A stretch of 63,990 nucleotides of DNA, filler included, from Octopus bimaculoides (Eukaryota): assembly GCF_001194135.2 (NCBI RefSeq). It is 6 parts of 6 records of this genome, joined end to end, with 100 filler letters (N's around TTAATTAATTAA, not from the genome) between each part and the next. Parts side by side here need not be neighbours in the genome. Positions count along the whole stretch, not along the records: positions 30,220 to 51,728 come from NC_068988.1; 5 more parts are not named here. The stretch is one strand, 5' to 3'. Both the position numbers and the translations under genes were made by a program. Positions 18,607-51,541 of this stretch are shown in pieces. Under the pieces are notes generated by a model that worked only from the letters and a program-made list of their open reading frames with translations, was not told the origin of the DNA and ran no database searches. The first letter of the stretch is position 1. Every line of letters starts with the position of its first letter.

Positions 18607-18853
18607 AGAGGCGCGTGCCTTAGTGGTTAAGGTGTTAGACTCATGATTATAAGATTGTGGTTTCGATTCCTGGACCGGGCGATACGTTGTGTTTTTAAGT
18701 AAGACACTTCATTTCACGTTGCTCCAGTGCACTCAGCTGGCAAAAATGAGTAATCCTGCGACGGATCGGCGTCCCGTCCAGGTGGGGGATTTATACGGCA
18801 GTGAAGCCGGGAAACCGGCCCTTATAAGCCTGGCATGACTCGAGCAGGACACA
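18607..18853 (+). mobile_element. tRNA-derived SINE, family C, followed by (TTC)n
   Basis: A box GCCTTAGTGGTTAAGG and B box GGTTTCGATTCC; long TTC tail at 18855-18950. Confidence 0.85.
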
Positions 18854-30219: not shown

Positions 30220-31865
30220 CTCCAAACAAAAGAGGGACTTGTGAAAACGAAAGCCATCCCCATTAGAAGAGGAATATTCCAGGGAGACACGCTCTCTCCA
30301 CTCCTGTTCTGCTTGGCACTCACACTTTTAACTGACTTGCTAAATAGAACTGGATGCGGATACAAATGCTACGGCAAAACATCAGCCACCTTTTATATAT
30401 GGATGACCTAAAATTATACGCTAGAAATGATAAAGAGCTGGAAACACTACTACAGACAATACATGGATTTATCAAAGAAATAGATATGAAATTCGGATTA
30501 CAAAAATGTGCCAAAGCAACCCTGAAAAGAGGAAAACTAGTTAAGAGTAGCAACATCACACTAGATAAAGCCAATGAAATAAGAGAATTAAACCAAAGCC
30601 AGTCATACAAATATTTAGGAATCAATGAACTAGATAGGATACAACACACCCAACTGAAAGAGAAAATAAAGAAAGAATACTATAGACGAGTTAGATCAAT
30701 ACTAAAAACAGAGCTCAATGCTAAAAACAAGATAATAGGTATTAACACTTTAGCCGTCCCATTTATAAGTTACAGCTACAATATCCTTAACTGGACTCTA
30801 AACGAACTATCTAAAATAGACAGAAAAACAAGAAAAATAATGACAGGATATAGGATGCACCACCTAGAATCTGACATAGAAAGGCTATATATGCAACGTA
30901 CAGAATGTGGTAGGGGTCTTATACAGCTGGAAAACTATTATAAAATAACCACCATAGGACTGCAAAAATACCTACTTCAGAAGCAAGGAAAACTAATACA
31001 AATAGCCACAAAACACGAGAAAAACAAAAAAGCTGTTTTCAGTATTTAAGGAAGCTGACAAATACAAACAAGAAATCATACTACCTAATAAATGCGAAGA
31101 AGAAGAAACAAAAAAAGCTATAAAACAAATGAAATCCAAACTAAAACTAGAACAGCAACGGACCATGATAAAACGATGGCAAGAAAAGCCCCCACATGGT
31201 AAATACTGGGCTACACTAAATGCAAAAGGAATAGACAGAGAAAAATCCCAGCAATGGTTGAGAAGCTCAGGACTCAAAGCAGAGACTGAAGGATTTTTAA
31301 TTGCTGCACAAGACCAAAGCCTCCCCACCAGAAATTACCAAAAACATATAATGAAAAGAAACATAACTAACTGCAGAATATGTGGCGATGGACAAGAAAC
31401 AATAAATCATGTTATCTCTAGCTGCTCAGTCCTGGCTAAGAAGGAATATATTCACAGACACGACAGAGCTGGGACCTATATACACTGGAATCTATGCCAA
31501 CATTATAGAATAACAACAGAAAAAAGATGGTATAAACACACGCCAGAAAAGGTCACAGAAAACGAGAAAGCAACCATACTCTGGGATATGCCAATACACA
31601 CAGATAGAGAAATTAAGGCCAATAGGCCAGATATAGTTGTCAAAGGTATGGAGGAAAAAATGCTTTCTAATTGATGTATCAATATCAGCAGGTCGCGCAC
31701 ACATGGTTGTGATGCATGTGCCTGGTGTACCCTTATGGGACGGGTAGTCATGATGGGTATACTGGGCTTCGTATATTTTACCCTAGTGTCACTTTGATGG
31801 CATGCACTGCTCTCTCACTCAATAATCATAATGATAATAATAATAATAATAATAATAATAATTTT
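30220..31865 (+). mobile_element. R4/Dong-clade non-LTR retrotransposon, 3' half (RT, CCHC finger, REL endonuclease), frameshifted
   Basis: RGIFQGDTLSPLLF, HLLYMDDLKLYA, YKYLGI, CRICGDGQETINHVISSC, RHD and NRPDIVV...LIDV motifs; the endonuclease end is deleted; 3' UTR then (AAT)n tail. Confidence 0.92.
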
Positions 31866-35571: not shown

Positions 35572-37100
35572 NGGGGGGGGGGGTTTCTTCAGCAGTTCCT
35601 TGTAATATCTGATATTGAGGTCTTTTTTGAAACTGGGGATATCTAGATTTTAAAATTTTGTAGTCACTTTGAGTAACTTCGAATATTTTTATGTGTGCCG
35701 GTATATTTTTGGTTGGTGTGACATAATAATTGGATTCATTAATATCCATGTGTTTGTGGAAGTGTTCTATTAATTCGTTATTTTTTGTGATTATGATCAT
35801 TTGGTGGAATGTAGTCCATCTGTTGTGTATGTAGGCTATGTTTTGTTTGTGATGGTTGTTGGGGGTAGTGGCGAGAATGATGTTATTGTTGCCTGTGTGT
35901 GTGTGTAGGTGGGTTTATGCATGGTGTGCTGTTGTTACTGTTCGTTCCCTCCTCCATTTTCTCGTACCTGCCTTTTTTTCTGGTTATCGTTTGTGCTCTC
36001 CCGTCTTTTCCTTCCTTTTCGTGTAACTGTTTGCAATGCCTGTCCTTCCTTATTTCCGTCGTTTTCGTTGTACGAATAGGGGAGGGGTATTTCTTCCGCA
36101 GGTATTTGTTTTACTGTTGGCGTTGTTAATGGTGCTGCCATTATTTTTGGTGGGGAGTTCCCTGTCGCTGCCGTTGTTGTTGCTGTTTGTGATGTGGTTG
36201 TAGCTGCTGCTGGTGTGGATTCTGCTTGACGTTGTGCAGTTGTTTCCACTCCTGTCGTTGCTGTAGCTACAGCTGCTGCCGGCGCTATAGTGGTTTTTGT
36301 GGATGCTGTTGTGTCCAGTTGTCTCTATTGGCACTGTTGTTGCTGTTTCTGCTGCCCTTGTTGTGGTGTCTGTTGTAGTTGTAGTGGTGTTAATGGTTGC
36401 TGCGGCTCATCCCCCCCTCTCCTTCTTTTCTTCGGACAATAGACTCTGATGGGATCTGAATCACCACAGAAGTAACATCGCGGCCTTCTTCCTTCCACAA
36501 TCACCTGCAGATGCCTCCAGGGATTTCTATTAGGTCGGGAATTTTCTCTACAGATTATGGTTTTACTTGCAGTAGAATTTCCAACCTTAGTTCTCCTTTT
36601 GGATTTTTGGATTTCTAGGAGGTTTCTTTGATCTTCCAGCACCACGGCTTTCACTACCCACCAGAAATCGATTTCTGGTGGAACGTTACTTATTTTTATT
36701 CGGATCACTCTCTGTCCCAGATAGATGGAAATTAAAGTGAACTCCTCCGTTTTCAATAGGACAGTTTAGTGTTTTTGTGCCAGTGATTCCGACTGGAATA
36801 CGATCTTGTTGTAGCCGCACTTTGGGGCGTGGCAGACAAAGCAGACATCCCCCATATATTTTTCAGGCAGAGCTCGGCTTGGTCTGATGGTATTCTTTCC
36901 AGTCTTCTTCTTTTCATGGACAGACATCTGTACATGATTGTTTTTTTACGGTTGCTCTAGCAGGCTTTGAGGCGCATTTAGTGTAGCCTTTCGTTCTTCA
37001 CGCCTTATAACCCTCTCAGCTTCCTTTAGATGTTCTTTCTTACCCTTTAAACACTTAATTTAAAGCTTTTTTGTAACTTTTGCAAAAGAAACGTTATTTC
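35572..37100 (-). mobile_element. LINE ORF1-like region with zinc knuckle (decayed)
   Basis: ORF 36325-36756: RVIRIKISNVPPEI...LQVIVEGRRPRCYFCGDSDPIRVYC (CX2CX4[H>P]X4C), followed by a T/Q-rich low-complexity region; frameshifted. Confidence 0.65.
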
Positions 37101-38414
37101 TATTTGAACCTTCTCTTTCTTTGTTCGAAATTTTACTGATTTGTGGTGGTGGTGGTAATATTTTCCTTGCACAATTGGCTGCTGCTAGGTATATTTTGTG
37201 CTTCCTTGATCGAATTCTCATTATTCCTGACACTTCCACTGTAGTTGTTGTTGTTGTCATTGCTGTTGCCACTCCTGCAGCTACTGCCACTATCATTTAT
37301 ATCTACAGTGAGTGGGGGCGAGTAACGGTAGAAGACAATTTCATGTTCTACATTTCCCACTTCCCTCTCGCTGACAAAGACGACGACACCATATTAAATT
37401 TTGCAAATTTTGTAAGGAAAATTAATTTTCTTTTCGAGTGATTTTTGCCCCGCAGGGCAAAAAAAAAAAAAAGAGCAATGTTAATCAGACCAGTATTGTC
37501 TAGATTAACTTAGTCACAATTTATAATAACAAAATATAACAATAACAATCTTTTTAGAGGCACACACTTACGGAGCTCTGAAAGACTCGTCCCGCTCTGA
37601 CGACAACAACAACAACAACAACCATAATAATAATAATAATAATAATAATGATAATAATAATAATAAAACATAGTAATTAGTTTATGAAAATGTTTCCCTC
37701 TGAAGAAAAACTTCGGAAGTAAATATTTTGTGAATACTACTTTTATTGAATTCAGTTTTTCCATTAAAGCCAAAACTATTTATTTACAAAGGGAAAAAAT
37801 CATATATTTTAGACATGTGAGTTGCTAGACTGACTTGATAGGAAATATGACGGAAACGTTGAAACAGTAAATCTGTATCCATTTTGGCTTGCTTATTTAA
37901 TATTTGTAAATCGCTTGTATTTTGGCCTTATCTAATATTTGTTAATCCCGGTCTATGTTGACTTTCTTATCTGATATTGGTTTAATTCTTTTTGGACATA
38001 ATTATAAAATGTTATTTTGCTTTCAGTTCGTAGCTTTTCTTCTTTGTATGTCTTATAGATGTCTCATGAACTGTCAGCCAGTATCAGGTAAAATATCTGC
38101 TGTGAGTACAAATATCTAATGTGGCTGTCTATAAAGTATCGGCAGTTTGTTCTTTAAAATCTCTCCTTGCCTACATAAGAAATCTTATTTAGCTGTCATA
38201 TACAATAGGATGAATATGTAAAATTATAATATATCATGGGTAATATTGTATGTGACAACTAAAAGTATAAAGTTTGCACCAACTGACTCACTGTTATATA
38301 ACTGGTGTATGGAGTCTCTTCTAATTGTAGAAAACCTGGTAGTACTTAGGTGACGTAAGCCATAACTGTCCCACAATATTACATGAAAAGGCAGCTAACT
38401 GCTGCATTTCTGCC

Positions 38415-38503
38415 GATAATTCCACTCTTTGAAGTTTCAATTTGATAATTCCACTCTTTGGCGTTACAATTTGATAATTCCACTCTTTGGCGTTACAATT
38501 TGA
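38415..38503. repeat. 29-bp tandem repeat x3
   Basis: GATAATTCCACTCTTTG(AA/GC)GTT(T/A)CAATTT at 38415, 38444 and 38473. Confidence 0.9.
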
Positions 38504-39532
38504 AACTTATTATAATAATTTGTCCAAATGATTTCTTTTAGATTAGTTCTTTGTTCATTGTTCTTTGTTCCACACCTAAAGTTGCTCAGAGAACACACTA
38601 ACTCTTGAAAAATTACACTTATTCAGCAGCCATACACCCATAGACACGCACACATATATGCACATACCTCACGCACACATACATATGCATACACCACACG
38701 CACGCACAGCATACAAACACTCACACTCATCAGGCGATACAAGGGCGTATGCGCACTGAGATCGTTTTCTCACCTCCTTTACACTTATACACAAAGGTGA
38801 ATACATACTATGCTTATGTTCCTATTTTCTCTTTTCATTTTCATGGACATATAACGCAAATCGTGTTTGTAAATTATATTGCCGGGAATCACTCACAATA
38901 TAGCACCTGAACGAGGCTGCATTACTTAATCGATTCTCTAACATAATCCCTTGCTGACACAAATTCTATAGGACCTTTGCTCATTATGTAAAATAATTAT
39001 AACTTTTCATCTCAGCTAAAATTCTCTTTTCCCACAGAACTTTATTCTCTTACTACCTCCACTCCCTTACATCGGCGCTTAATTTTCCCACGCCTCTCTG
39101 TCCATTGCCCCTTGCACACACATCCCGTGAGGTTGAATGACAACACTATCTATTCAACCAGTTATTTACCTTATCTTCTTTATATCTGGTTATTGTCAAC
39201 GTGTATCTCGCCTCTTAATCCCACCTTCTGTTTCACTATTTCCTTCCGCTTCATCCAAGTCCTACTCCTTTCTCTTCTCTTTAAACGTCTCTATTTGTGA
39301 ACACTACCAGACAACTCGCATTTATCTCTCTACTCTTGAAAAAGGAAAGCTAACTTTAATTATTTCATCTGGATTTATCGCTGATTGCACACTTATGACA
39401 CCATGTACAAATTACTTGCGAATATGGTTATTACTCAAGTTATGGCTAGTTGAAATATCTGTTGAGATAAGACTTTACATAAATTTTTCTATAGTTTTAT
39501 AATCTATATTTTGTGTCACAAGCCTATCTGTA

Positions 39533-39538
39533 TTTATT
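39533..39538 (-). promoter_or_regulatory. candidate polyadenylation signal of the MAM gene
   Basis: AATAAA on the minus strand ~400 nt downstream of the TGA at 39932; positional inference only. Confidence 0.3.
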
Positions 39539-39931
39539 TGACTTGCTACCTCAATAGACATATACTTATGGAGTCTATAATAATTGGATGCACACTTTGC
39601 TTTTCCTGTCTCTCTCACTCTCTCTCAATATCCCTTTCTTTCTCGGTTTATTCTCCTCTTTTATACACATATACACATATGTAGGCACAAAATCGCACGC
39701 GTGCTCTATCTATGTTTTCCTTATCTCAAGTCTTTTGTTCAGTTTATGTTGCTTCTTCCCCCATTTTTCTCTGTCACCTATGTCAACCCGCAACTGCTAT
39801 TAAAAACTGCAATGATTTATCCATTTCACCCCCTTCTCCCTCTCTTCCTCTATTTAACTTTCTCTCCCACTCACTTACCCTCTATATCCTTACACTCTCT
39901 CTCACCTACTCCCATTCATCATCATCTAATG

Positions 39932-40015
39932 TCAGCAAGGTCCTCGAGTAAGTACGGTATCATCAATGGCGATGTCACTTCGATAAGATTCTCCGACCAC
40001 ACCGGCAATAATCAA
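39932..40015 (-). CDS. terminal coding exon of MAM-domain protein (LIIAGVVGESYRSDIAIDDTVLTRGPC*)
   Basis: Acceptor ttctttgttacag with a phase-0 start matching the upstream donor. GxSYxSDIAIDD...GPC is the canonical MAM C-terminal strand, followed by TGA. Confidence 0.9.
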   Translation of the reverse strand: MIIAGVVGESYRSDIAIDDTVLTRGPC

Positions 40016-40297
40016 CTGTAACAAAGAAGAAAAACAAACTACAACAGTTAGTACAGTTAAATTATTGCAAATTTGTACATGTTGTTAATGTGAGGCAATA
40101 TTTTCTCAACATTGAAGAAAGCAAAAATTCCAAACCGGCATAATTTCATTGAAGTGGAGAAAGAAACTATTGGGTCACTAGAAAAGAAATCGATATAACG
40201 GGTTTTGTGCAAAAATCGAAAATGCCCAGTCTCGATGACAATGATAATAAAGATGTCTATCATTGGTACAAGGCCAGACATTTTAGATGATCTATGT

Positions 40298-40484
40298 CAG
40301 TGCACCGCAACCTTTTCTCACTTGCGGTACACTTATATTTCTTTTAAAATTCGGCGGCACACCTGAACTAAAAATATGACTAAAAGCGTAGGGAAAAAAA
40401 TTTATATTCAGGTTACACTGTGGCACACCTAGCATCGTTTTGTGACACACCAGTGTGATGCGGCATGCCGGTTGCGGAGCATTC
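40298..40484. mobile_element. hAT (Charlie-type) MITE
   Basis: Imperfect TIRs CAGTGCACCGCAACC / GGTTGCGGAGCATTC; 8-bp TSD ATCTATGT / ATCTATAT (7/8 match). Confidence 0.75.
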
Positions 40485-40657
40485 ATCTATATATTCAATT
40501 AAATTCACTCTTGTATTTGATTAGGACTTCACCCCGACGGGATTTGAATTCAAACCGTAAATATAGGTAACTATATATCACTAGGATGAAAAGTAAAGTG
40601 GAAACTAATAGACTTTGTATTCAGAACTACAACCATCACCACTGGCACTTCCACCGA

Positions 40658-40722
<65 letters not shown>

Positions 40723-41015
40723 TGAAAATAACCACGCACACATACAAACATTGAGTTCCTTGCCTGAAGGTCGCAGTGACGTGAAACTTGAGTCGTGAGA
40801 TAAACATTCAGTTTCAATACACCGTATACTCCAAACATGTATTGACCACTCCCATTGATTTCGTATAATTTAACGTCCATGTGTGTACAAGCGCTTGTTC
40901 TTCTGTCTTGTACGTATTTGTTTGTGTGTGATTTATGTCTGTATGTGTGTGTGCGTCTGTGTGTGTAGGTAAACTGTACTTAATGCAGCTATTTTCCAGA
41001 TAACGAGAACTCAAC

Positions 41016-41449
41016 TGGCATTCCGTCGGTTATGACGCAAAGGTTCCAGTTAATTCGATCAACGGAACAGCCTGCTCGTGAGATTAACGTGCAAGTGGTT
41101 GAACACTCCACAGACACGCGTATCATTAACACATTATTCAGGAAGATACAAAATTTGACAAGGTTGGCTCTTTGAAATACAGGTATAACTCATTTTTGCC
41201 AGCTGAGTGAACAGGCGGTTAACATAGGGACATGGCTACTGAACATGAAGTAAGTCGTTTCGAAACAATAAACTCTTGTTACTGGCGACCAATACGAAGT
41301 GCCGATATTTCAATGTAGAGATAATAACCTACAGCATAAATCAACGTGAAATAAAGTGTCACCTGCAAGGACATAACGTGTTGCCGTGAATCGAACTCAT
41401 GATCTTAAGATTGTGAGTCGAATATCCTAACCATTAAGCCACGCGCCTT
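41016..41449 (-). mobile_element. tRNA-derived SINE (family C head, family D body) interrupted by MAM exon copy
   Basis: The head at 41342-41449 and the body at 41016-41211 are contiguous in the intact 18607 copy (ATTTCACGTTG-CTCCAGT-GCACTCAGCTGGCAAAAATGAG). Confidence 0.85.
41212..41341 (-). pseudogene. degenerate partial duplicate (pseudo-exon) of MAM exon 43172-42916
   Basis: About 15 mismatches in ~119 aligned nt by eye, a 34-nt deletion and an early TAA; retains the acceptor tttatgctgtag. Confidence 0.88.
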
Positions 41450-41604
41450 CACTGAAAGGAAACTCAGTACGATTGAGATAACTGGTTAGTTAAACTGGGC
41501 ATTAATCTTACTCCAGTTGGGAATTTTCGGTCTGGTTAGACTGAGATGAAGCTACTGATCATTGTTAGGCATTTAATAGTTCAATTACTACGATACGCGC
41601 GCGT

Positions 41605-41693
<89 letters not shown>

Positions 41694-42561
41694 CTCACAT
41701 TCACACACACACGTGCGTGCACACATTCACATACACGCACTCTCACAAATGCGCACATACTTTTACACAAACGTACACACGCACATACACGCATATTCGA
41801 GCACATACGAATATAACTACTGAAATGTTCCTGTGTAATAATAGTTTTTTTTTTTACAATCATAGCAATTTAAAGTAGAAAATGTGATATTTAGGAAAAC
41901 AATAAAAAGCAGGTTTTCTCGCTGACTAAAGAAATGAATTAGCCAATAATATTTCCAAAATTCCTTCTATTCAGTTCACGTATGACCGACTGTTTAAAGA
42001 TTGAGTTCTTCTTACACATCATTTCAAATGTACACATCTCAAAACTGTTGCCTAAGTGTCTCTCTCCCGAAATATCATTGAACAAGATTCATCAGACAAG
42101 CTTATTTTGTTGCTGTAAATGTAATACACTGCATGCTATTATTGTATGTACCCAATGAAGTTTACGTTTATTTGTATATACATACATACATACATACATA
42201 CATACATACATACATACATACATACATACATGCATGTATGTATCTAGCTGGCTAGCTATCCATGTAAACAATGAAAGCAATGAATACTAGGCAGAAAACA
42301 GCAAGGGAGGAACAAGTTTTAACAAATATTGTTTTACAAGTTTAACGTTCAAAAAGGAAAAGAGCCTTGAAGTTTCGGATGCTAGTCTTTCACCAAAAGA
42401 AAGATAGTGAAAAGTAATAATGAAAGAGAGTGAATGAGAAAACGTCATTAGGAGAAAAATCAAGAGTCAGGGGCTAGGTGGGTAAACGGTTCCATAGGGA
42501 TGTTATGGGAGAAGAGTGGGTAGGGGTATGCACATATAGTAGTGTGTCCATCTATTGAAAC

Positions 42562-42615
<54 letters not shown>

Positions 42616-42915
42616 GTCTGTATGTCTATATTATTACCAACGATGGAGTTGTCACTCGATCCGCGAGAAATAGTAGCTAATTTGCCTCCAAGCACATCCT
42701 ACTATACTAGATATGGAAGGGACACATTAGATACACAATACCCTAAAAAGACGGGTTAGATCATGGCTGGAATACATTTAATCTAAAGTCATACAGTTAC
42801 ACAGAATAAAACGCTAGTGAAAAACATTTGTTTTAATTGAAAAGTATTGAAAGAAGTAAAAACGTAAAAATGGGAAGGGGAATGAATATTTATATAAAAA
42901 AGAGAAAGAAATTAC

Positions 42916-43172
42916 CTGTGATGATTCTGAAACTGAGAAACCAATTCGAGTAATGTTCCAGTAGGGTCCAATGTTGCCACTTCTTATCCATAAAATTGTT
43001 TCTCTGTTGTGGTTGCGTAAACTGACGGTTAACATAGAGACATGGCTTCCGAACATAAAGTAAGCCATTTCAAAACAATAACCTCCTGTAACTGGCGGTA
43101 AAACCGGTGACATAATCCTTGCGACATCTCCACCAATACGAGGTGCCGATGTTTCAATGTAGAGATAATAGC
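42916..43172 (-). CDS. internal coding exon, central MAM domain (GYYLYIETSAPR...YCFEMAYFMFGSHV..L...LW..SGNIGPYW)
   Basis: Acceptor tttatgttatag (phase 1) and donor CAG|gtaatt (phase 0); GYYLYIETS, CFxFxYxMxG and LW..SG..G..W motifs are diagnostic of MAM. Confidence 0.93.
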
Positions 43173-43539
43173 CTATAACATAAACCAATGTGTTATATGT
43201 TAGATAAAAAAAATGGAGGAATAGAAAACAAGAATAGTTACTGTAACAGGCAAGTGAGTGATGATCAGGCTGGAAGTGTACTAGAAAAACAAAACGAACA
43301 CCAGACGAAGTGAAGATCGGTTAGAGAGAACTTCGTTAGAGAGGAATTGAGAGAATAGGTTTTAAGGGACTGTACTCACATATGCATACACACGCATGTA
43401 TAAAACCATTTTGAGGTAAAAGAATTGAATATACGTTGGTCTAGAGAAAATAGAGAATGAGACCTCAAGGTCGGTTACACACACGCATACATGCACACGC
43501 GCGCGCGAGCTCACCACACATACGCATGTATCTATTGGC

Positions 43540-43695
43540 TTTAAATTTTGACACCAGGTCAGCAATTTCAGGTGAGTGGGTGAGTCGATTACACCGACTT
43601 TAGTGCTCATCCCTGATAGGATGAACGGTGAAGTCGGCCTTGGTAGCATTTGAACTCAGAACGTCAGCGCGGTAACCATTCTGTCAACTCGCCTT
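43540..43695 (-). mobile_element. SINE family A (degenerate)
   Basis: Family A tail and core on the minus strand. Confidence 0.7.
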
Positions 43696-44063
43696 ACAGA
43701 CAGACAGATAGATAGATAAATAGATAGATAGACAGATAGATATAAGCATACATGTACTCATATACAGACATCGTTTTACGAAAAACAAATTAGATCACAA
43801 CATTAATTAGATTATAAGGTAACTAATAATGAAAATCAAATACTAAAGAATTAAATGTTAATAATACACATACATATAATAAAAAAAATGATTGTAACGG
43901 TAAACTTTTTATCGTCATGCAATAACGCACACATGCATAAAATAATAAATCATTATGATTTTATATTTTTTTCTGAACATAAATTCAAATTAATTTAACC
44001 GATGGGTTTGGATATTTATAACGTTCGTATATAATTATGTATATACATATGTGTGTGTGTATT

Positions 44064-44094
<31 letters not shown>

Positions 44095-44129
44095 ATTTGT
44101 GCGCGCGCGTGTGTGTGTGTGTGTGTAAA

Positions 44130-44166
<37 letters not shown>

Positions 44167-44324
44167 AGTTAGCGGTTAGACAGCCATCCAAGGGATAATA
44201 AATATCCAATATACTACTAGAGGGATACCTATTTCCATTCAAAGGCTTACTTTTGCAAGGCAATAGTACAATTGAATAATAGGTACAAGTGGAGTTAAAC
44301 AAAAGTTTATCCGGAATTTATAAA

Positions 44325-44698
44325 AGGCAAGGAAGAAAATGGAAAAGAGATTCACTTGACAAACATCAGTAAGATTTATTTACTATAATCATAGGAATAA
44401 ATAAATAAATAAATAAATAAATACAACTCCACTCTTACAGCTGTTTCTACTTTGGGGCTCCAATATGCTACAGTTGACGTATCAAACAAAAATTGAACTC
44501 CAAAGCTTCATCAGAGAGTCAGTAAGTCGATAATGATAAAGACACAAGGTAAAAAAAGTAAAAAATAAATAAGTAAAGCCCCAGAGTAGAAACAGCTGTA
44601 AGAGTGGAGTTGTATTTATTTATTTTTTCTTGTAATTATAGTAAATAAATCTTACTGATGTTTGTCAATTGAATTACTCCTCCATATTCTTCTTGCCT
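44325..44698. mobile_element. fold-back MITE with ~130-bp TIRs
   Basis: AGGCAAG...TTGACAAACATCAGTAAGATTTATTTACTATAAT...TACAACTCCACTCTTACAGCTGTTTCTAC is mirrored at 44580-44698. Confidence 0.85.
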
Positions 44699-44711
44699 AA
44701 TGTATATAGAT

Positions 44712-45119
44712 AGGCGCAGGAGTAGCTGTGTGGTAAGTAGTTTGCTTACCAACCACATGGTTCTGGCTTCAGTCCCACTGCGTGGCACCTTGGGCAAGTG
44801 TCTTCTACTATAGCCTCGGGTCTACCAAAGCCTTGTGAGTGGATTTAGTAGACGGAAACTGAAAGAAGCCCGTCGTATGTATATGTATATATATGTGTTT
44901 GTATGTTTGTGTGTCTGTGTTTATCCACCCAACATCGCTTGACAACCGCTGCTGGTGTGTTTACGTCCCCGTAACTTAGCGGTTCGGAAAAAAGCCCGAT
45001 AGAATAAGTACTAGGCTTACAAAGAATGAGTCCTGGGGTCGATTTGCTCGACTAAAGGCGGTGCTCCAGCATGGCCGCAGTCAAATGACTGAAGCAGGTG
45101 AAAGAGTAAATAGTAAGAG
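44712..45119 (+). mobile_element. tRNA-derived SINE family B (full length)
   Basis: tRNA-like head, CCTTGGGCAAG CORE-like box, central (TA/TG) tract and conserved 3' tail; at least six other pieces in the window. Confidence 0.92.
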
Positions 45120-47180: not shown

Positions 47181-47752
47181 TTTCTTATTAGCCGCATACC
47201 AGCGAAATCTTACTGCCAGTGATATATGGAATTACAGTGACTATTCAAGTACTGACACCAGCGATATAAATATGGGTACTTTTATGCACCATGTGCCCAT
47301 ATGCGAGGTCCTCTCAAGATAGATAACGTAGTATTCAACGTTCAAATAATGCATCTAATAATGCATCTAATAATAACATCAACCTTAATGTGGATGTTAT
47401 TAATATTGCTTCTATCGCAAATAATTATATAAATGAATATACATATATGTACGTATGTATGTATGTATGTATGTATGTATGTATGTATGTATGTATGTAT
47501 GTACACGTATAGGAGGGTTACTATCGTAATATTGAGTAGGTAAGCTATTTTACACAATGAATGATGTATGTTATATCATCGAAAATCCAACTGTTATACT
47601 ATTTAATAAATTTCATTGTTTCTACTATTTTCTTTCAACTGTTGCTTTGTTTAGTTTCAATCGTTTCCCACCTTCTCTTGAAACCTTTCCATTTTGAAGT
47701 CGATTTAATATTTTCATTTTCATAGAAACTGATTTTCTTGACATATTAAAAC

Positions 47753-48076: not shown

Positions 48077-51000
48077 AGCTATTTCTGCTCAAACGAGAAA
48101 AGAAAAAGAAAAAAAATGATGGGCATGGTCCGTGTTTCGAATGAGACAGTTAGGCCATTTTGTGGCGAGGGAGATGTGACCGCTTGGATGCAAAAAACTA
48201 ACTTGGTGGCAAGACTCCAAGGTATAGATGTTCTAGCCACTTTTATACCGTTGTACATCGATGGATCGGTGTTGGCGCTATACCTGGAAATGGAAGAGAA
48301 GGACCAGTTGAGCGCAGAAAAAAATAGAAGGCCGGCTGATGGAGGCTTTCACAGAAGGGCCATTTATGGCATATGGTCGACTGGGGAAAATAAAGTGGAA
48401 GGGCGAACAGATCGATGTGTTTGCCAACGAAATCAGGAGATTGACTAGACTCGTGGGATATAGAGATGGCGCGTTAGAACAAAGCGTAAAAATAAGCCTT
48501 TGTAACAGGATTTCCTGACCATCGGGCCAGAGCCATCGTCTCGTGTTGCAGAACGACACCTTTGGCAGCGACTGCAACACCGAGAAGGGGACGAACAAAG
48601 AGCGGCGGAGAGGGGTCGAACAAGGAGCGTGTGCGACCCTTCAAAGGGCAATGTTTTCGGTGTCTGGGTTCGCACATGGCGAGGGACTGCAGGGAATCCA
48701 GGCTTGGAGTGATTTGCTAGAGAATGCGTGCAGGGAAACGGTCCAAGGGATACTACTGCACCGGTAGTTGTCCCATCTAAGGAGTAGAGGCACATTTACA
48801 GTCGTTGCTAGTAGTAGAAGTCGTGTTGAACGAAAAGGTGTCACGAACCCTCGTGGACGCGGGCTGCTAAACCCTAATGACTCCAGAAGTGGTAGAAGAA
48901 TGGAGTGGAGTGAGGGTTGTTGACGGTACGGTAGTTGAATGCAGAGGAAGTAGCGATGTGGAGATGGTGGTACGAGGAACATGATTGAGGTTGCGGGCTA
49001 TTGTAATTGATCGTGTAGTGGACGGGATCGATGTCGTGATGGGGATGGACACCATTGTCCGCTTGGGAAGTGTTACGGTCAATGAAGCCGGTGTAGTGCT
49101 CGGTGATGCGGGGGCGCTATGCGCTGTGAGTTCGCGACAGGAGAGTGGTGAGAGCTGCGAAGAAAAATATGCTGCACACACTATCACAGACAAACATTTT
49201 CGAGCTGTGTTCGATGGCCGGCAGTGGATAGTGGAAGGGAGATTCTCCGACATTGAAGAACGCAATAGGCTGCTATCAGCATACCCCGAAAGGGGATGCC
49301 AGAAGCGAGTTCGAGGGAGAGGTGGACCGGTGGCTCAAGGAAGGTGTTCTGATTCCTTGGAAGGAGGAAGTGAAGACTGGAGTGCTACCGCTGATGGCAA
49401 TAGTGTAGCCGACGAAACATAAAGTCAGGCCAGTATTGGATTTCCGGGAACTGAACGACCACGTATTGTGCCATACGGGCGGTGAAGCTACGGACATTTG
49501 TAGCGAAACCTTGAGAGAGTGGAGGAAGATGACGGGGGCCTCCACAATCGTCGCATGCCTGCAGCTGCATGTGGCTGAGAGACTGGGGAAATATCAGCTG
49601 GTAAGGTATAAGGGACGGACATACTGCCTGACCAGGTTGGGATTCAGGCTGAATTTAGCACCGAAGATTATGGCGATAATTCTCAAGACCATCCTGCGAA
49701 AAGCCAACAAAGTGAAAAGAACCACCAATTTCTATATCGATGACATCCTGGTGGATGAGAGCATAGTGTCGGCAAAGAGGTCATAAGCTACATGAAAAGT
49801 TTTGGGCTAACTGCAATGGAAGGAGGAGCTGCCCTGGGACTCAAGCTACGGAGAGACAAGGCTGGCATGTTGGTGTTTCAGAGAGGGAATGAAATCCCAG
49901 AACTGGGCTCAAAGACAAGCAGGCGGGAACTGTTTTCTGTGTGTGTGAAGCTGCTGGGACACTACCCGATTGCAGGATGGCTCCGGACGGCATGCAACTT
50001 CATCAAGAGGCGAGCTGAAGGAGTGAGGTGGAGTGATAACGTAGGCGAGAAGACAACCACCATGATGCAAGAAGTCTTGGAGAGGGTGACTGCGGAGGAC
50101 CCAGTAAGAGGGAACTGGTGTGTGCCCAAATTGAAGAAGGGGATCGTGTGGTGTGATGCCAGCAGCAGAGATACGGGAGTTGTCCTAGAAATTGGAGGTG
50201 TCGTGGTGAAGGATGCGGCCTGGCTTAGGAAGAAGGACGACTACAACCACATCAAGGTGGCGGAGCTGGATGCCGTGCTGAAAGGGCTGAACCTGGCCCT
50301 GAGGTGGGGGCTGCGTACCATCGAGATCCGGACCGATTCGGCCACTATACTTAGGTGGGTGGGATCAGTGATCACAGGCGAGCGGAGAGTGCAAACCAAA
50401 GGGTGTGCAGAAATGCTGATAAAACGCCGTCTGGGAATTCTGGGCGAGCTAACTGCCGAGTTTGACCTGAGGCTGAGTGTGGTTTTTGTGCCCTCAGAGA
50501 GAAATAGAGCGGACATCCTGACCAGAGTAAAGAAAGCTTGGTTGCAGGTGCCAGAGGATCTGGAGCAGGGAGTGGCTGCAGTGTATCGACTGAGTGACTT
50601 GCAACTGAGAAGATTGCATACCATGCATCACATGGGGGTGGACAGGACCCTGTTCCTAGCCAGGAAAGTTGACTCTGACGTGTCCAGGCAGAGTGTGCAA
50701 AGAGTAGTTGGGAGCTGCGACAGGTGCCAGTCCATTGACCCCGCTCCGGGTGTGCATTCCAGTAGAATACAACTGGAAACGACTGGCAGTGGACGTGACG
50801 CACTACCGGCAGGGGACATACCTCTCGATGGTCGACTGCGGATCAGGTCGGTTGGCTATATGGAGGGAGATGAAGACGGGAACCGGGGAGGAAATCACAA
50901 GAATACTGAATGAAGTATTTCTAGAACGAGGCCCTGTGGACGAGCTGCTTGTCGACAATGGAAATAGAGTTGTGGAGAGGCATCATCGAACCATCAAGAC

Positions 51001-51541
51001 CATAGCAGAGAGGGGCCACATCTCACCGATCGAGGCTGTTTTTTGGTATAATATGTCGCCCAGGACGGGTCAGGCTGAGGAGTCAGTTCCACATAGGGCA
51101 ATATTCAAGTACGAGTGGAGGCATCCATGTACTGTATCGCCGCGTCCGGCAGAAGAGAAACAGCATGCCTTTGTGCAGGTCGGAGAAGAAGTCTGGGTTA
51201 ATCCCCCAAATGCGCGGTGCACATCATAGTGGGAAACGGGAACAATAACCTCTGTGAATTCGAGGAACAACGTATCCGTAGATGGCATGCCGCGACATGT
51301 TTTGGATGTGCGCAGGGTCATCACTGCGACGGAGGATGGGGGCCAACAGTAACGGACAAGAGAACGAAGCCGGCAGGAACATGCCAGGAACTGAGGCCAG
51401 TGCTGAAGTCCTACGGCGGTCACAGAGGGAGCGGTGCCTTCCTCGCTGGCTGTCTGATTATAAGACAAGTTAAGGCGTATGGTCGGGATTGAGAAGAGCG
51501 CGTGGGCAGGTTGGTTGAATGATCTTCAGATCAGGGGGGCG

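What the first reader, a model, noticed from the sequence alone, without database searches (positions are those of the whole stretch)
41016..43190. A SINE has captured a copy of the adjacent host exon (MAM pseudo-exon inside a SINE, in the gene's last intron)
Seen: on the minus strand the SINE head (41449-41342) ends ...ATTTCACGTTG and the body resumes GTTCACTCAGCTGGCAAAAATGAG at ~41211. In the intact copy at 18711-18750 these two parts are contiguous. Between them lie ~130 nt copied from the MAM exon 1.8 kb upstream, including its intronic acceptor (tttatgctgtag vs tttatgttatag), about 87% identical, with a 34-nt deletion and an early TAA. Short microhomologies flank the insert (TTG on the left, CAGTT/CTGTT on the right). 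Inference: because intron sequence is included, the template was DNA or pre-mRNA, pointing to microhomology-mediated templated insertion during break repair or template switching during SINE reverse transcription. The copy keeps a same-strand acceptor, so it could act as a cryptic or poison exon.
Basis: partly seen in the sequence, partly recalled or inferred. Interest (0 to 1): 0.75.

Follow-up and report, generated by a model that had tools for sequence, protein, structure and literature searches.

The report
Exon-fragment copy pasted inside an octopus SINE
An old, dead SINE in the last intron of an Octopus bimaculoides MAM-domain gene is split by a decayed ~130-base copy of the intron/exon boundary 1.8 kb upstream, most likely a scar of microhomology-guided break repair: a tidy curiosity, not a new kind of element.

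Summary
On the minus strand, 41348-41207 aligns with 43192-43017 at 122/142 identities (86%, 16 transitions and 4 transversions), with one 34-nt gap. The source is the last 20 nt of the intron plus the first ~155 nt of the MAM exon (43172-42916) of O. bimaculoides A0A0L8I0T1.

The copy sits between a tRNA-like SINE head (41450-41342) and a SINE body (41215-41016). Six other octopus proteins carry translated copies of the body and a seventh carries the head, so this is a repeated family.

An independent copy (P0008) and colinearity with the MIR/CORE core suggest the two halves were contiguous and that at most about 2 nt of SINE were lost. I could not check this on DNA because no octopus genome was reachable.

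Both junctions show imperfect homology: 9/12 on the left (CACGTTG/CACATTG) and 8/13 on the right (CAGTT core).

The nearly loss-free return to the departure point favours templated insertion at a break or stalled fork in an already resident SINE. A double jump by a reverse transcriptase fits less well.

The copy evolves neutrally (differences 5/6/5 over codon positions), has early stops and lacks a usable donor site. "Poison exon" and "mobilised exon" are therefore unsupported.

Interest is modest.

The parts
41342..41450 (-). 5' half of the SINE. It has a tRNA-like head with a box A-like motif (TGGCTTAATGG, 41441-41431) and a box B-like motif (GAGTTCGATTC, 41398-41388). The first half of a CORE-like central domain follows, ending ...ACTTTATTTCACGTTG.
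   Evidence: Read directly. The antisense translation 41336-41386 matches the SINE-derived C-terminus of O. bimaculoides protein P0008. ARAGORN and Rfam tRNA models do not recognise it.
41342..41348 (-). Left junction microhomology: CACGTTG in the SINE against CACATTG at 43192-43186 in the intron. Over an extended window the match is 9/12.
41329..41341 (-). Copied intron end with the acceptor (A-TTTATGCTGTAG). It corresponds to source 43185-43173.
41216..41328 (-). Pseudo-exon, a decayed copy of the first ~155 nt of the MAM exon (source 43172-43026) lacking 34 nt (43131-43098). It is frameshifted, with TAA after 16 codons in the native phase and TAG after 30 codons in phase 0.
   Evidence: Differences fall 5/6/5 over codon positions 1/2/3 (computed from the list), which indicates neutral decay.
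41210..41215 (-). Right junction microhomology: CCTGTT here, inferred CCAGTT in the intact SINE, and TCAGTT at 43025-43020 in the exon.
   Evidence: The intact SINE sequence is inferred from P0008 and from frame continuity with a 2-nt bridge.
41016..41215 (-). 3' half of the SINE: the second half of the core (GTTCACTCAGCTGGCAAAAATGAG...) and the body, ending ...GACGGAATGCCA.
   Evidence: tblastn: six independent O. bimaculoides proteins (P0002-P0007) carry translated copies of 41207-41030 in sense or antisense.
43017..43192 (-). Source segment: the last 20 nt of the upstream intron (43192-43173) plus the first ~155 nt of the MAM exon.
42916..43172 (-). The genuine MAM-domain exon (257 nt; acceptor AG at 43174-43173, donor CAG|GTAATT).
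   Evidence: 100% identical to UniRef A0A0L8I0T1_OCTBM. Pfam MAM E = 1.1e-20, profile positions 42-157 of 158 together with the last exon.
40016..42915 (-). Last intron of the annotated gene (2,900 nt). It contains the SINE and three long microsatellites.
39932..40015 (-). Last coding exon (LIIAGVVGESYRSDIAIDDTVLTRGPC plus stop), preceded by the acceptor ttgttacAG.

Best explanation
A tRNA-derived SINE with a CORE-like centre was already resident in the last intron of an O. bimaculoides MAM-domain gene, in the same orientation as the gene. It suffered a double-strand break or a stalled fork in the middle of its core, between ...CACGTTG and CCAGTTCAC....

One 3' end annealed out of register, through a short imperfect homology, to the intron/exon boundary 1.8 kb upstream, on the sister chromatid or in cis. 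About 160-175 nt were synthesised. The new end then re-annealed to the other side of the break through a second microhomology.

The outcome is a direct, dispersed duplication of 13-20 nt of intron plus ~155 nt of exon inside the SINE, with almost no loss of SINE sequence. The copy has since decayed neutrally: about 14% differences, a 34-nt deletion and stop codons. It has no evident function.

Shown:
- the duplication, its limits and its orientation;
- homology at both junctions;
- neutral decay of the copy;
- that the flanks belong to a repeated octopus element.

Inferred:
- that the two flanks were exactly contiguous;
- that the SINE was there first;
- the repair pathway.
For: - The duplication is real and limited to this segment.
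- The flanks are the two complementary halves of one repeated element. The body occurs translated in P0002-P0007 and the head in P0008.
- In P0008 the SINE-derived exon reads MNELEQREIKC. This back-translates to ...CACGTTG-CTCCAG-TTCATTCAT, so the left half continues through CTCCA into the start of the right half (GTTCACTCAG here).
- Restoring just 2 nt (CT) puts both halves of the window copy in one antisense frame colinear with P0008 (BLASTP).
- The insert-free element aligns colinearly with the MIR head and core across the junction: score 39 against 22.3 +/- 3.4 for shuffles. With the insert kept, the alignment stops at the head.
- At most ~2 nt were lost at the insertion point, which is what the two ends of one break give by default.
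- Junction homologies of 9/12 and 8/13 are far above chance.
- Templated insertions flanked by microhomology that return to the original site are an established outcome of MMBIR-type repair (PMC8421209).
- Three long microsatellites lie between source and target, including a (GT)n about 260 nt from the break. These are plausible fork-stalling sequences, but that link is inference.
Against: - No DNA copy of the intact SINE and no orthologous locus could be examined. Contiguity and the order of events (SINE first, insertion later) are therefore inferred.
- P0008 covers only ~10 nt of the right half. Part of the BLASTP match (YFAQ) is genuine calcipressin sequence, not SINE.
- The MMB-TI events catalogued in PMC8421209 are inverted copies of templates within 100 bp. 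Here the copy is direct, ~160 nt long and 1.8 kb away.
- The sequence cannot tell a DNA template from an unspliced RNA template.
- No target-site duplication was found to delimit the SINE.
Confidence: 0.6

Rival explanations
1. The chimera formed during retrotransposition. While copying the SINE RNA at this intron, the LINE reverse transcriptase jumped at CCAGTT onto the nascent unspliced pre-mRNA of the host gene. It copied back across the exon start into the intron, then jumped back onto the SINE RNA at CACGTTG and finished the head.
For: - The SINE, the insert and the gene are all in the same orientation, as this model requires.
- Intron sequence is included, so any RNA template was unspliced.
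- Both switch points have microhomology.
- Template switching during TPRT is a recognised source of chimeric retrocopies (bioRxiv 10.1101/2025.02.02.635956).
- The SINE looks at least as decayed as the insert, so the ages do not contradict simultaneity (rough).
Against: - It needs two internal switches, with the second landing about 2 nt from the point of departure on the original RNA. That would be a coincidence under this model, whereas a break gives it by default.
- Known RT chimeras join a 5' partner to a 3' element. They are not an insert flanked on both sides by the same element.
- No target-site duplication flanks the composite.
Confidence: 0.15
2. The break in the resident SINE was repaired from RNA. 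The nascent pre-mRNA of the host gene, still unspliced and tethered at the locus, served as template for an RT-competent polymerase (a LINE RT or polymerase theta).
For: - The same-sense orientation of insert and gene is obligatory for this model, and it is met.
- The template is within the same transcription unit, just upstream.
- Junction microhomology is present.
- The near loss-free return is explained as in the DNA-templated version.
Against: - Nothing in the sequence distinguishes it from DNA-templated repair.
- RNA-templated repair is rare where it has been measured (general knowledge, not tested here).
- The same orientation is also expected in half or more of DNA-templated cases.
Confidence: 0.12
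3. The chimeric SINE is, or was, a mobile subfamily. This copy, next to its source exon, would be the founder, so the MAM fragment has been spread around the genome (SINE-mediated exon shuffling).
For: - The head keeps box A-like and box B-like motifs.
- I could not search the genome, so other copies are not excluded.
Against: - Protein searches with the exon peptide and with the chimeric peptides returned only the host protein and ordinary SINE-bearing proteins, with no second chimera. This is a weak test.
- The copy has a TTTT run in its body (41150 region), which would terminate Pol III transcription.
- The copy is heavily decayed.
Confidence: 0.04
4. This is not one SINE. Either two independent truncated SINE fragments happen to flank a local duplicate of the exon, or the arrangement is an assembly artefact.
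For: - No target-site duplication was found.
- The scaffold has N gaps elsewhere.
- Contiguity of the halves is inferred, not seen in DNA.
Against: - The two fragments have the same orientation, and their break points complement each other to within ~2 nt.
- SINEs truncated at the 3' end are unusual.
- A mis-assembly would join near-identical sequence, but the two copies differ by 14% and by a 34-nt indel.
- There are no gaps between 41000 and 43200.
Confidence: 0.04

Closest known systems
Microhomology-mediated templated insertions (MMBIR / FoSTeS, synthesis-dependent MMEJ, polymerase-theta end joining)
   Same: - An inserted stretch with an identifiable nearby template in cis.
- Short imperfect homologies at both joints.
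- Return to the original site with almost no loss (PMC8421209; PMC2943611 and PMC7165422 listed).
   Different: - The catalogued MMB-TI signature is an inverted copy of a template within 100 bp, usually tens of bases long.
- Here the copy is direct, ~160 nt at origin, and taken from 1.8 kb away.
- It is an old germline event in a cephalopod.
- The pathway is inferred from the scar only.
Chimeric retrocopies made by LINE reverse-transcriptase template switching (U6/L1, mRNA/L1 chimeras)
   Same: Two unrelated transcripts end up joined in the same orientation, sometimes with host-gene exons.
   Different: - Those chimeras have a 5' partner fused to a 3' LINE or SINE part, are flanked by target-site duplications and mostly carry spliced exons.
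- Here the host fragment is internal, flanked on both sides by the same SINE.
- It includes intron sequence.
- No duplication of the target was found.
Octopus CORE-type tRNA-derived SINEs (OR1/OR2 of Ohshima and Okada 1994; CORE-SINE superfamily of Gilbert and Labuda 1999)
   Same: - A tRNA-like head with A and B boxes, followed by a central domain resembling the MIR core.
- Octopus is a recorded host of CORE-SINEs (PMC4824008; PMC4758252).
   Different: - I could not obtain the OR1/OR2 or Repbase/Dfam consensus.
- The other SINE in the piece (44711-45115) shows no significant similarity.
Exon capture by composite retroelements (for example the SVA subfamily carrying MAST2 exon 1; from my own knowledge, not checked here)
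   Same: A non-autonomous retroelement carrying a piece of a host gene.
   Different: - Those arise by splicing or transduction, carry spliced exons at the 5' end, and are demonstrably amplified.
- Here there is one decayed copy next to its source, with intron sequence, and no evidence of mobility.

Membership tests
tRNA-derived SINE | Internal Pol III promoter: box A and box B in a tRNA-like head at tRNA-like spacing | tested here: inconclusive
   TGGCTTAATGG (41441-41431) and GAGTTCGATTC (41398-41388) fit the box consensuses by eye, 43 nt apart. However, ARAGORN finds no tRNA, and Rfam finds no tRNA match even at E <= 10 on the 141-nt stretch.
tRNA-derived SINE | Short, non-coding and dispersed in many copies in the genome | tested here: met
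   The element is about 310 nt without the insert, with stops in all frames. Translated pieces of it occur in seven unrelated O. bimaculoides proteins (P0002-P0008). The genomic copy number itself was not measurable.
tRNA-derived SINE | Flanking target-site duplication and a 3' tail (simple repeat or LINE-derived) | tested here: not met
   The best flank match, CAGTTTAACTA/CAGTTTACCTA, is not significant (p ~ 0.07) and is badly placed. Other copies continue into (AAC)n-like tails (NNNN runs in P0004 and P0007), but this copy has none left. This is expected for an old copy, so it is not disqualifying.
CORE-SINE superfamily | Central ~60-65 nt domain homologous to the MIR core | tested here: inconclusive
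   The local alignment of the insert-free element runs from box A through ...CTGTAAAATG of MIR, with score 39 against shuffles of 22.3 +/- 3.4 (max 35).
Microhomology-mediated templated insertion (MMBIR-type) | The inserted sequence is a copy of a template elsewhere, with microhomology at both template switches | tested here: met
   86% identity to 43192-43017. Junction matches are 9/12 and 8/13, with exact cores TTG/CAC and GTT (CAGTT inferred). The joint chance is of order 1e-5.
Microhomology-mediated templated insertion (MMBIR-type) | Synthesis returns to the original site with little or no loss of recipient sequence | tested here: inconclusive
   At most 2 nt (CT) are missing if the intact SINE reads CACGTTG-CT-CCAGTTCAC. 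That reading is inferred from P0008, frame continuity and the MIR core. It was not seen in a DNA copy.
Microhomology-mediated templated insertion (MMBIR-type) | Classical MMB-TI signature: inverted copy of a template within ~100 bp | tested here: not met
   The copy is direct and its template lies 1.8 kb upstream. The signature is as defined in PMC8421209. The event therefore works like a templated insertion but does not fit that narrow signature.
RT template-switch chimeric retrocopy | A 5' partner RNA fused to a 3' retroelement part, with the whole flanked by one target-site duplication | tested here: not met
   The host fragment is internal, with SINE sequence on both sides. No target-site duplication was found.
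Cryptic or poison exon | A usable acceptor and donor on the gene's strand, plus inclusion in transcripts | tested here: not met
   The acceptor copy is present. The native donor was not copied, and the best GT within 430 nt scores 1.6 against 8.5 for the real donor on a crude matrix. Transcript evidence is not testable with these tools.

The most novel reading that the evidence does not exclude
The chimera was made by the retrotransposition machinery itself. A LINE reverse transcriptase copying a SINE RNA at this intron switched onto the nascent unspliced host pre-mRNA and back, or repaired a break from that RNA. If so, SINE integration can pick up local exon sequence, including splice signals. 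If such chimeras stay transcribable, SINEs could scatter exon fragments. That would be a retroelement route to exon shuffling in the SINE-rich octopus genome.
Probability: 0.12. Interest if true: 0.65.

Novelty: new member of a known kind. Interest (0 to 1): 0.35.

Why it matters
This is a clean natural example of a long (~160 nt), direct templated insertion taken from 1.8 kb away. Both joints are legible and the recipient (a SINE) has a known 'before' state. Such scars show how break repair or replication template switching duplicates exon pieces, with their splice acceptors, inside introns. That is raw material for new exons.

A genome-wide count of such events in octopus, and their orientation relative to host transcription, could show whether DNA or nascent RNA is the usual template. 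On its own, this single decayed, apparently non-functional copy is a curiosity and has no wider biological consequence.

Tried and rejected
Attempts to obtain a second DNA copy of the SINE or an orthologous locus:
- blastn of the element against the piece found only itself and the exon.
- The look-up of encoding contigs for P0001, P0003 and P0005 found nothing on record.
- Exact-pattern scans with two SINE motifs in metagenome, prokaryote-genome and viral contigs gave 0 hits.
- Full-text searches for SINE or MIR core strings gave 0 papers.
- Gilbert and Labuda 1999 is not held, and three SINE papers have no supplements held.

tRNA detection on the head failed with ARAGORN and with Rfam at E <= 10.

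Aligning the element to the other SINE of the piece (44711-45115) gave nothing above shuffles.

The target-site duplication search was not significant.

The 34-nt deletion has no microhomology at its edges, so it says nothing about mechanism (read).

The Rfam microRNA hits sit on microsatellites and were dismissed.

I first read P0008's 'YFAQ' as SINE-derived. It is conserved calcipressin sequence (my knowledge of RCAN proteins), so I discounted that part of the match.

I did not run the search of protein representatives. Matches of 20-30 residues cannot reach significance in that library, so a negative result would say nothing.

Segmental duplication and mis-assembly were considered and rejected (see rival explanations).
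Full report
**Where we are.** The piece 30220-51728 is Octopus bimaculoides. The 85-residue translation of the exon at ~43172-42916 (minus strand) is 100% identical to UniRef A0A0L8I0T1_OCTBM, a 147-aa 'MAM domain-containing protein'.

tblastn places the model's three coding exons on the minus strand:
- 44758-44656
- 43172-42916
- 40015-39932

Residues 34-147 match Pfam MAM positions 42-157 of 158 (E = 1.1e-20). The last intron is 42915-40016, and the element under study (41450-41016) lies inside it, in the same orientation as the gene.

**Checking the observation.** Reading the minus strand gives four consecutive parts:
- a tRNA-like head, gaaggcgcgTGGCTTAATGGttagg...atGAGTTCGATTCacgg..., running into ...gtgacactttatttCACGTTG (to 41342);
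- then a-tttatgctgtAG|GTTATTATCTCTACATTGAAATATCGG... (41341-41216);
- then CCTGTTCACTCAGCTGGCAAAAATGAG... (from 41215);
- and so on to ...GACGGAATGCCA (41016).

A local alignment (and families D8/D10) pairs 41348-41288 with 43192-43132 and 41287-41207 with 43097-43017.
- Identity is 122/142 (85.9%), with 16 transitions and 4 transversions and one 34-nt gap (source 43131-43098).
- blastn gives E = 1.5e-24 within the piece.
- The copy includes the last 13-20 nt of the upstream intron with its acceptor AG, so the template was not spliced mRNA.
- No other non-simple repeat exists in 38000-45100, so this is not the edge of a larger segmental duplication.
- The 14% divergence and the indel exclude a collapse-type mis-assembly, and there are no N runs between 41000 and 43200.

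The only corrections are that the exon proper starts at 43172, not 43190, and that identity is 86% rather than 87%.

No octopus DNA could be reached. I therefore used octopus proteins that carry exonised SINE pieces.

- *The body is a repeated element.* A search with translations of the element returned six unrelated O. bimaculoides proteins: an MFS transporter, an adenosine deaminase-like protein, an LDL-receptor-repeat protein and others. Their odd terminal or internal segments match 41207-41030 in sense (…VSVECSATCTLISRAGCSVDRINWN…) or antisense (…QLIRSTEQPAREINVQV.EHSTDT…KYRYCSFLPAE). The 3' half is therefore part of a repeated element.
- *The head also recurs.* A second search aimed at the junction found P0008, a calcipressin whose C-terminus MNELEQREIKCLAQEHNTQPGPGFELTTS is the antisense translation of a related SINE head.
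- *P0008 crosses the junction, but only just.* Back-translated, that exon reads ...GGTTCGAATCCCGG...AAGACACTTTATTTCACGTTG-CTCCAG-TTCATTCAT. After CACGTTG this other copy continues with CTCCA and then GTTCAYTCA, which is the start of my right half (GTTCACTCAG). The evidence is real but thin, at about 10 nt of the right half. The preceding 'YFAQ' in P0008 is genuine calcipressin sequence, so part of the BLASTP score must be discounted.
- *Frame continuity agrees.* Inserting exactly 2 nt (CT) between 41342 and 41215 puts both halves of the window copy in one antisense frame (…THFCQLSEQEQREIKCHLQGHNVLP) colinear with P0008.
The score is 39 against 22.3 +/- 3.4 for shuffles. With the insert in place the alignment stops at the head.
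- *Octopus is a known host.* CORE-SINEs (OR1/OR2) are recorded in octopus (PMC4824008; PMC4758252).

Taken together, the two flanks are very probably the two halves of one CORE-type SINE, cut in the middle of its core with at most ~2 nt missing. I put this at about 0.85-0.9. It is not proven on DNA.

**The joints.**
- *Left.* SINE TATTTCACGTTG against intron TATAACACATTG is 9/12. The exact cores are CAC and TTG, and the one central mismatch is a G/A at a CpG.
- *Right.* The present-day SINE side CCTGTTCACTCAG against exon TCAGTTTACGCAA is 8/13. With the inferred ancestral CCAGTT, the exact core is CAGTT.
- *Chance.* Random site pairs from the piece reach these levels with probability ~7.5e-4 and ~6e-3. 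The windows were chosen after seeing the data, so these numbers are generous, but chance is not a serious explanation.
- *The deletion.* The 34-nt deletion has no microhomology at its edges and may be later decay.

**State of the copy.**
- The 16 differences within the exon-derived part fall 5/6/5 on codon positions 1/2/3, which is neutral decay.
- In the native phase the copy reads SYYLYIEISALRIGRQ*. In phase 0, as it would be read if spliced after the real exon, it stops after 30 codons.
- The native donor was not copied. The best GT in the next 430 nt scores 1.6 on a crude 5' splice-site matrix, against 8.5 for the real donor.
- The 'poison exon' idea has therefore no support in the sequence. 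Transcript data were not available.
- The Kimura two-parameter distance between copy and exon is ~0.16, so the event is old and should be shared by related species. This is a testable prediction.

**Mechanism.** The decisive feature is that the foreign segment is flanked by the same SINE on both sides with practically nothing missing.

- *Break or fork model.* For a break, or a stalled fork with template switching, this comes for free. One end primes on a microhomologous site 1.8 kb upstream, on the sister chromatid or in cis, copies ~160-175 nt, and is recaptured by the other end through a second microhomology. This is the logic of MMBIR/FoSTeS or synthesis-dependent MMEJ templated insertions (PMC8421209; related titles).
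- *RT model.* A reverse-transcriptase model needs two internal template switches, with the second landing within ~2 nt of the departure point on the SINE RNA. Known RT chimeras are 5'-partner/3'-element fusions flanked by target duplications, which is not what is seen here.
- *RNA-templated repair.* The shared orientation of gene, SINE and insert is compatible with an RNA template, namely nascent pre-mRNA. It is required for that model but does not discriminate.
- *Weights.* I give ~0.6 to DNA-templated repair in a resident SINE, ~0.12 to RNA-templated repair, ~0.15 to an RT double jump, and a few per cent each to a mobile chimeric subfamily and to 'two elements or artefact'.
- *Microsatellites.* The long (GT)n 160-380 nt upstream of the SINE, and two more microsatellites between source and target, are plausible fork-stalling sequences. 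That link is inference.

**Comparison and novelty.**
- It works like a microhomology-mediated templated insertion. It does not fit the narrow 'inverted, within 100 bp' MMB-TI signature.
- It is not a member of the RT-chimera class, because the defining architecture is not met.
- It is unlike SVA-type exon capture: there is no splicing and no sign of amplification.
- It is a new example of a known kind of event, in an unusual and legible setting.
- Interest is modest at 0.35. It would rise if genome-wide analysis showed many such events with a sense-strand bias, or several mobilised copies.

**Limits.** The three things that would settle the matter could not be obtained with these tools: the family consensus, the copy number of the chimera, and the orthologous intron in other octopods. 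The next-steps section lists them.

Noticed in passing
window 44656-44758 (-), 44711-45115 (+), 44332-44411 / 44613-44692: The annotated first exon of A0A0L8I0T1 is entirely TE-derived. Its ATG lies in the antisense of a second, unrelated tRNA-like SINE (44711 to ~45115 on the + strand, running into the N gap). Its donor (ATCA|GTAAGA) lies in one arm of an 80-nt, 88% inverted repeat (MITE-like). MAM profile positions 1-41 are missing from the model. The true upstream exons are therefore probably unannotated and the gene model is a fragment.
   Followed up: partly
window 30354-31674 (+): A non-LTR retrotransposon fragment: two ORFs with Pfam RVT_1 (E = 5e-9) and zf-RVT (E = 2e-5). It is a possible LINE partner family for local SINEs. 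This was not examined.
   Followed up: partly
window 48985-51229 (+): A GC-rich (51-54%) LTR-retrotransposon pol remnant with DUF7047, an RNase H-like RVT_3 domain, the integrase zinc-binding domain and the rve core, in frameshifted ORFs.
   Followed up: partly
window 36619-37047 (-): The C-terminal 140 residues of O. bimaculoides protein P0006 (an LDL-receptor-repeat model that also carries an exonised SINE) match this region at 25% identity (E = 2e-12). ORF 36325-36756 has no Pfam hit. This looks like another repeated, TE-like coding remnant that was swallowed by gene models.
   Followed up: no
window 41606-41720, 42170-42245, 42560-42640, 47437-47515, 44087-44160: Long microsatellites: (GT)n, (TACA)n and (TAGA)n. 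The Rfam 'mir-297 / mir-1277 / mir-3149' matches all sit on these repeats, fall far below the gathering scores, and are false positives.
   Followed up: yes
window 38415-38508: Three tandem copies of a 29-nt unit (GATAATTCCACTCTTTG.) at 86-92% identity, downstream of the gene (family D9). Their nature is unknown.
   Followed up: no
proteins P0002-P0008 (O. bimaculoides UniRef models): At least seven unrelated O. bimaculoides gene models contain translated pieces of this SINE family. Sense exons start at a cryptic acceptor (…tatttcaaAG|GGCCAG), and antisense exons start near the 3' end or at CCAG|CTGAGTGAAC. This shows frequent SINE exonisation, or annotation read-through, in the 2015 gene set.
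   Followed up: partly
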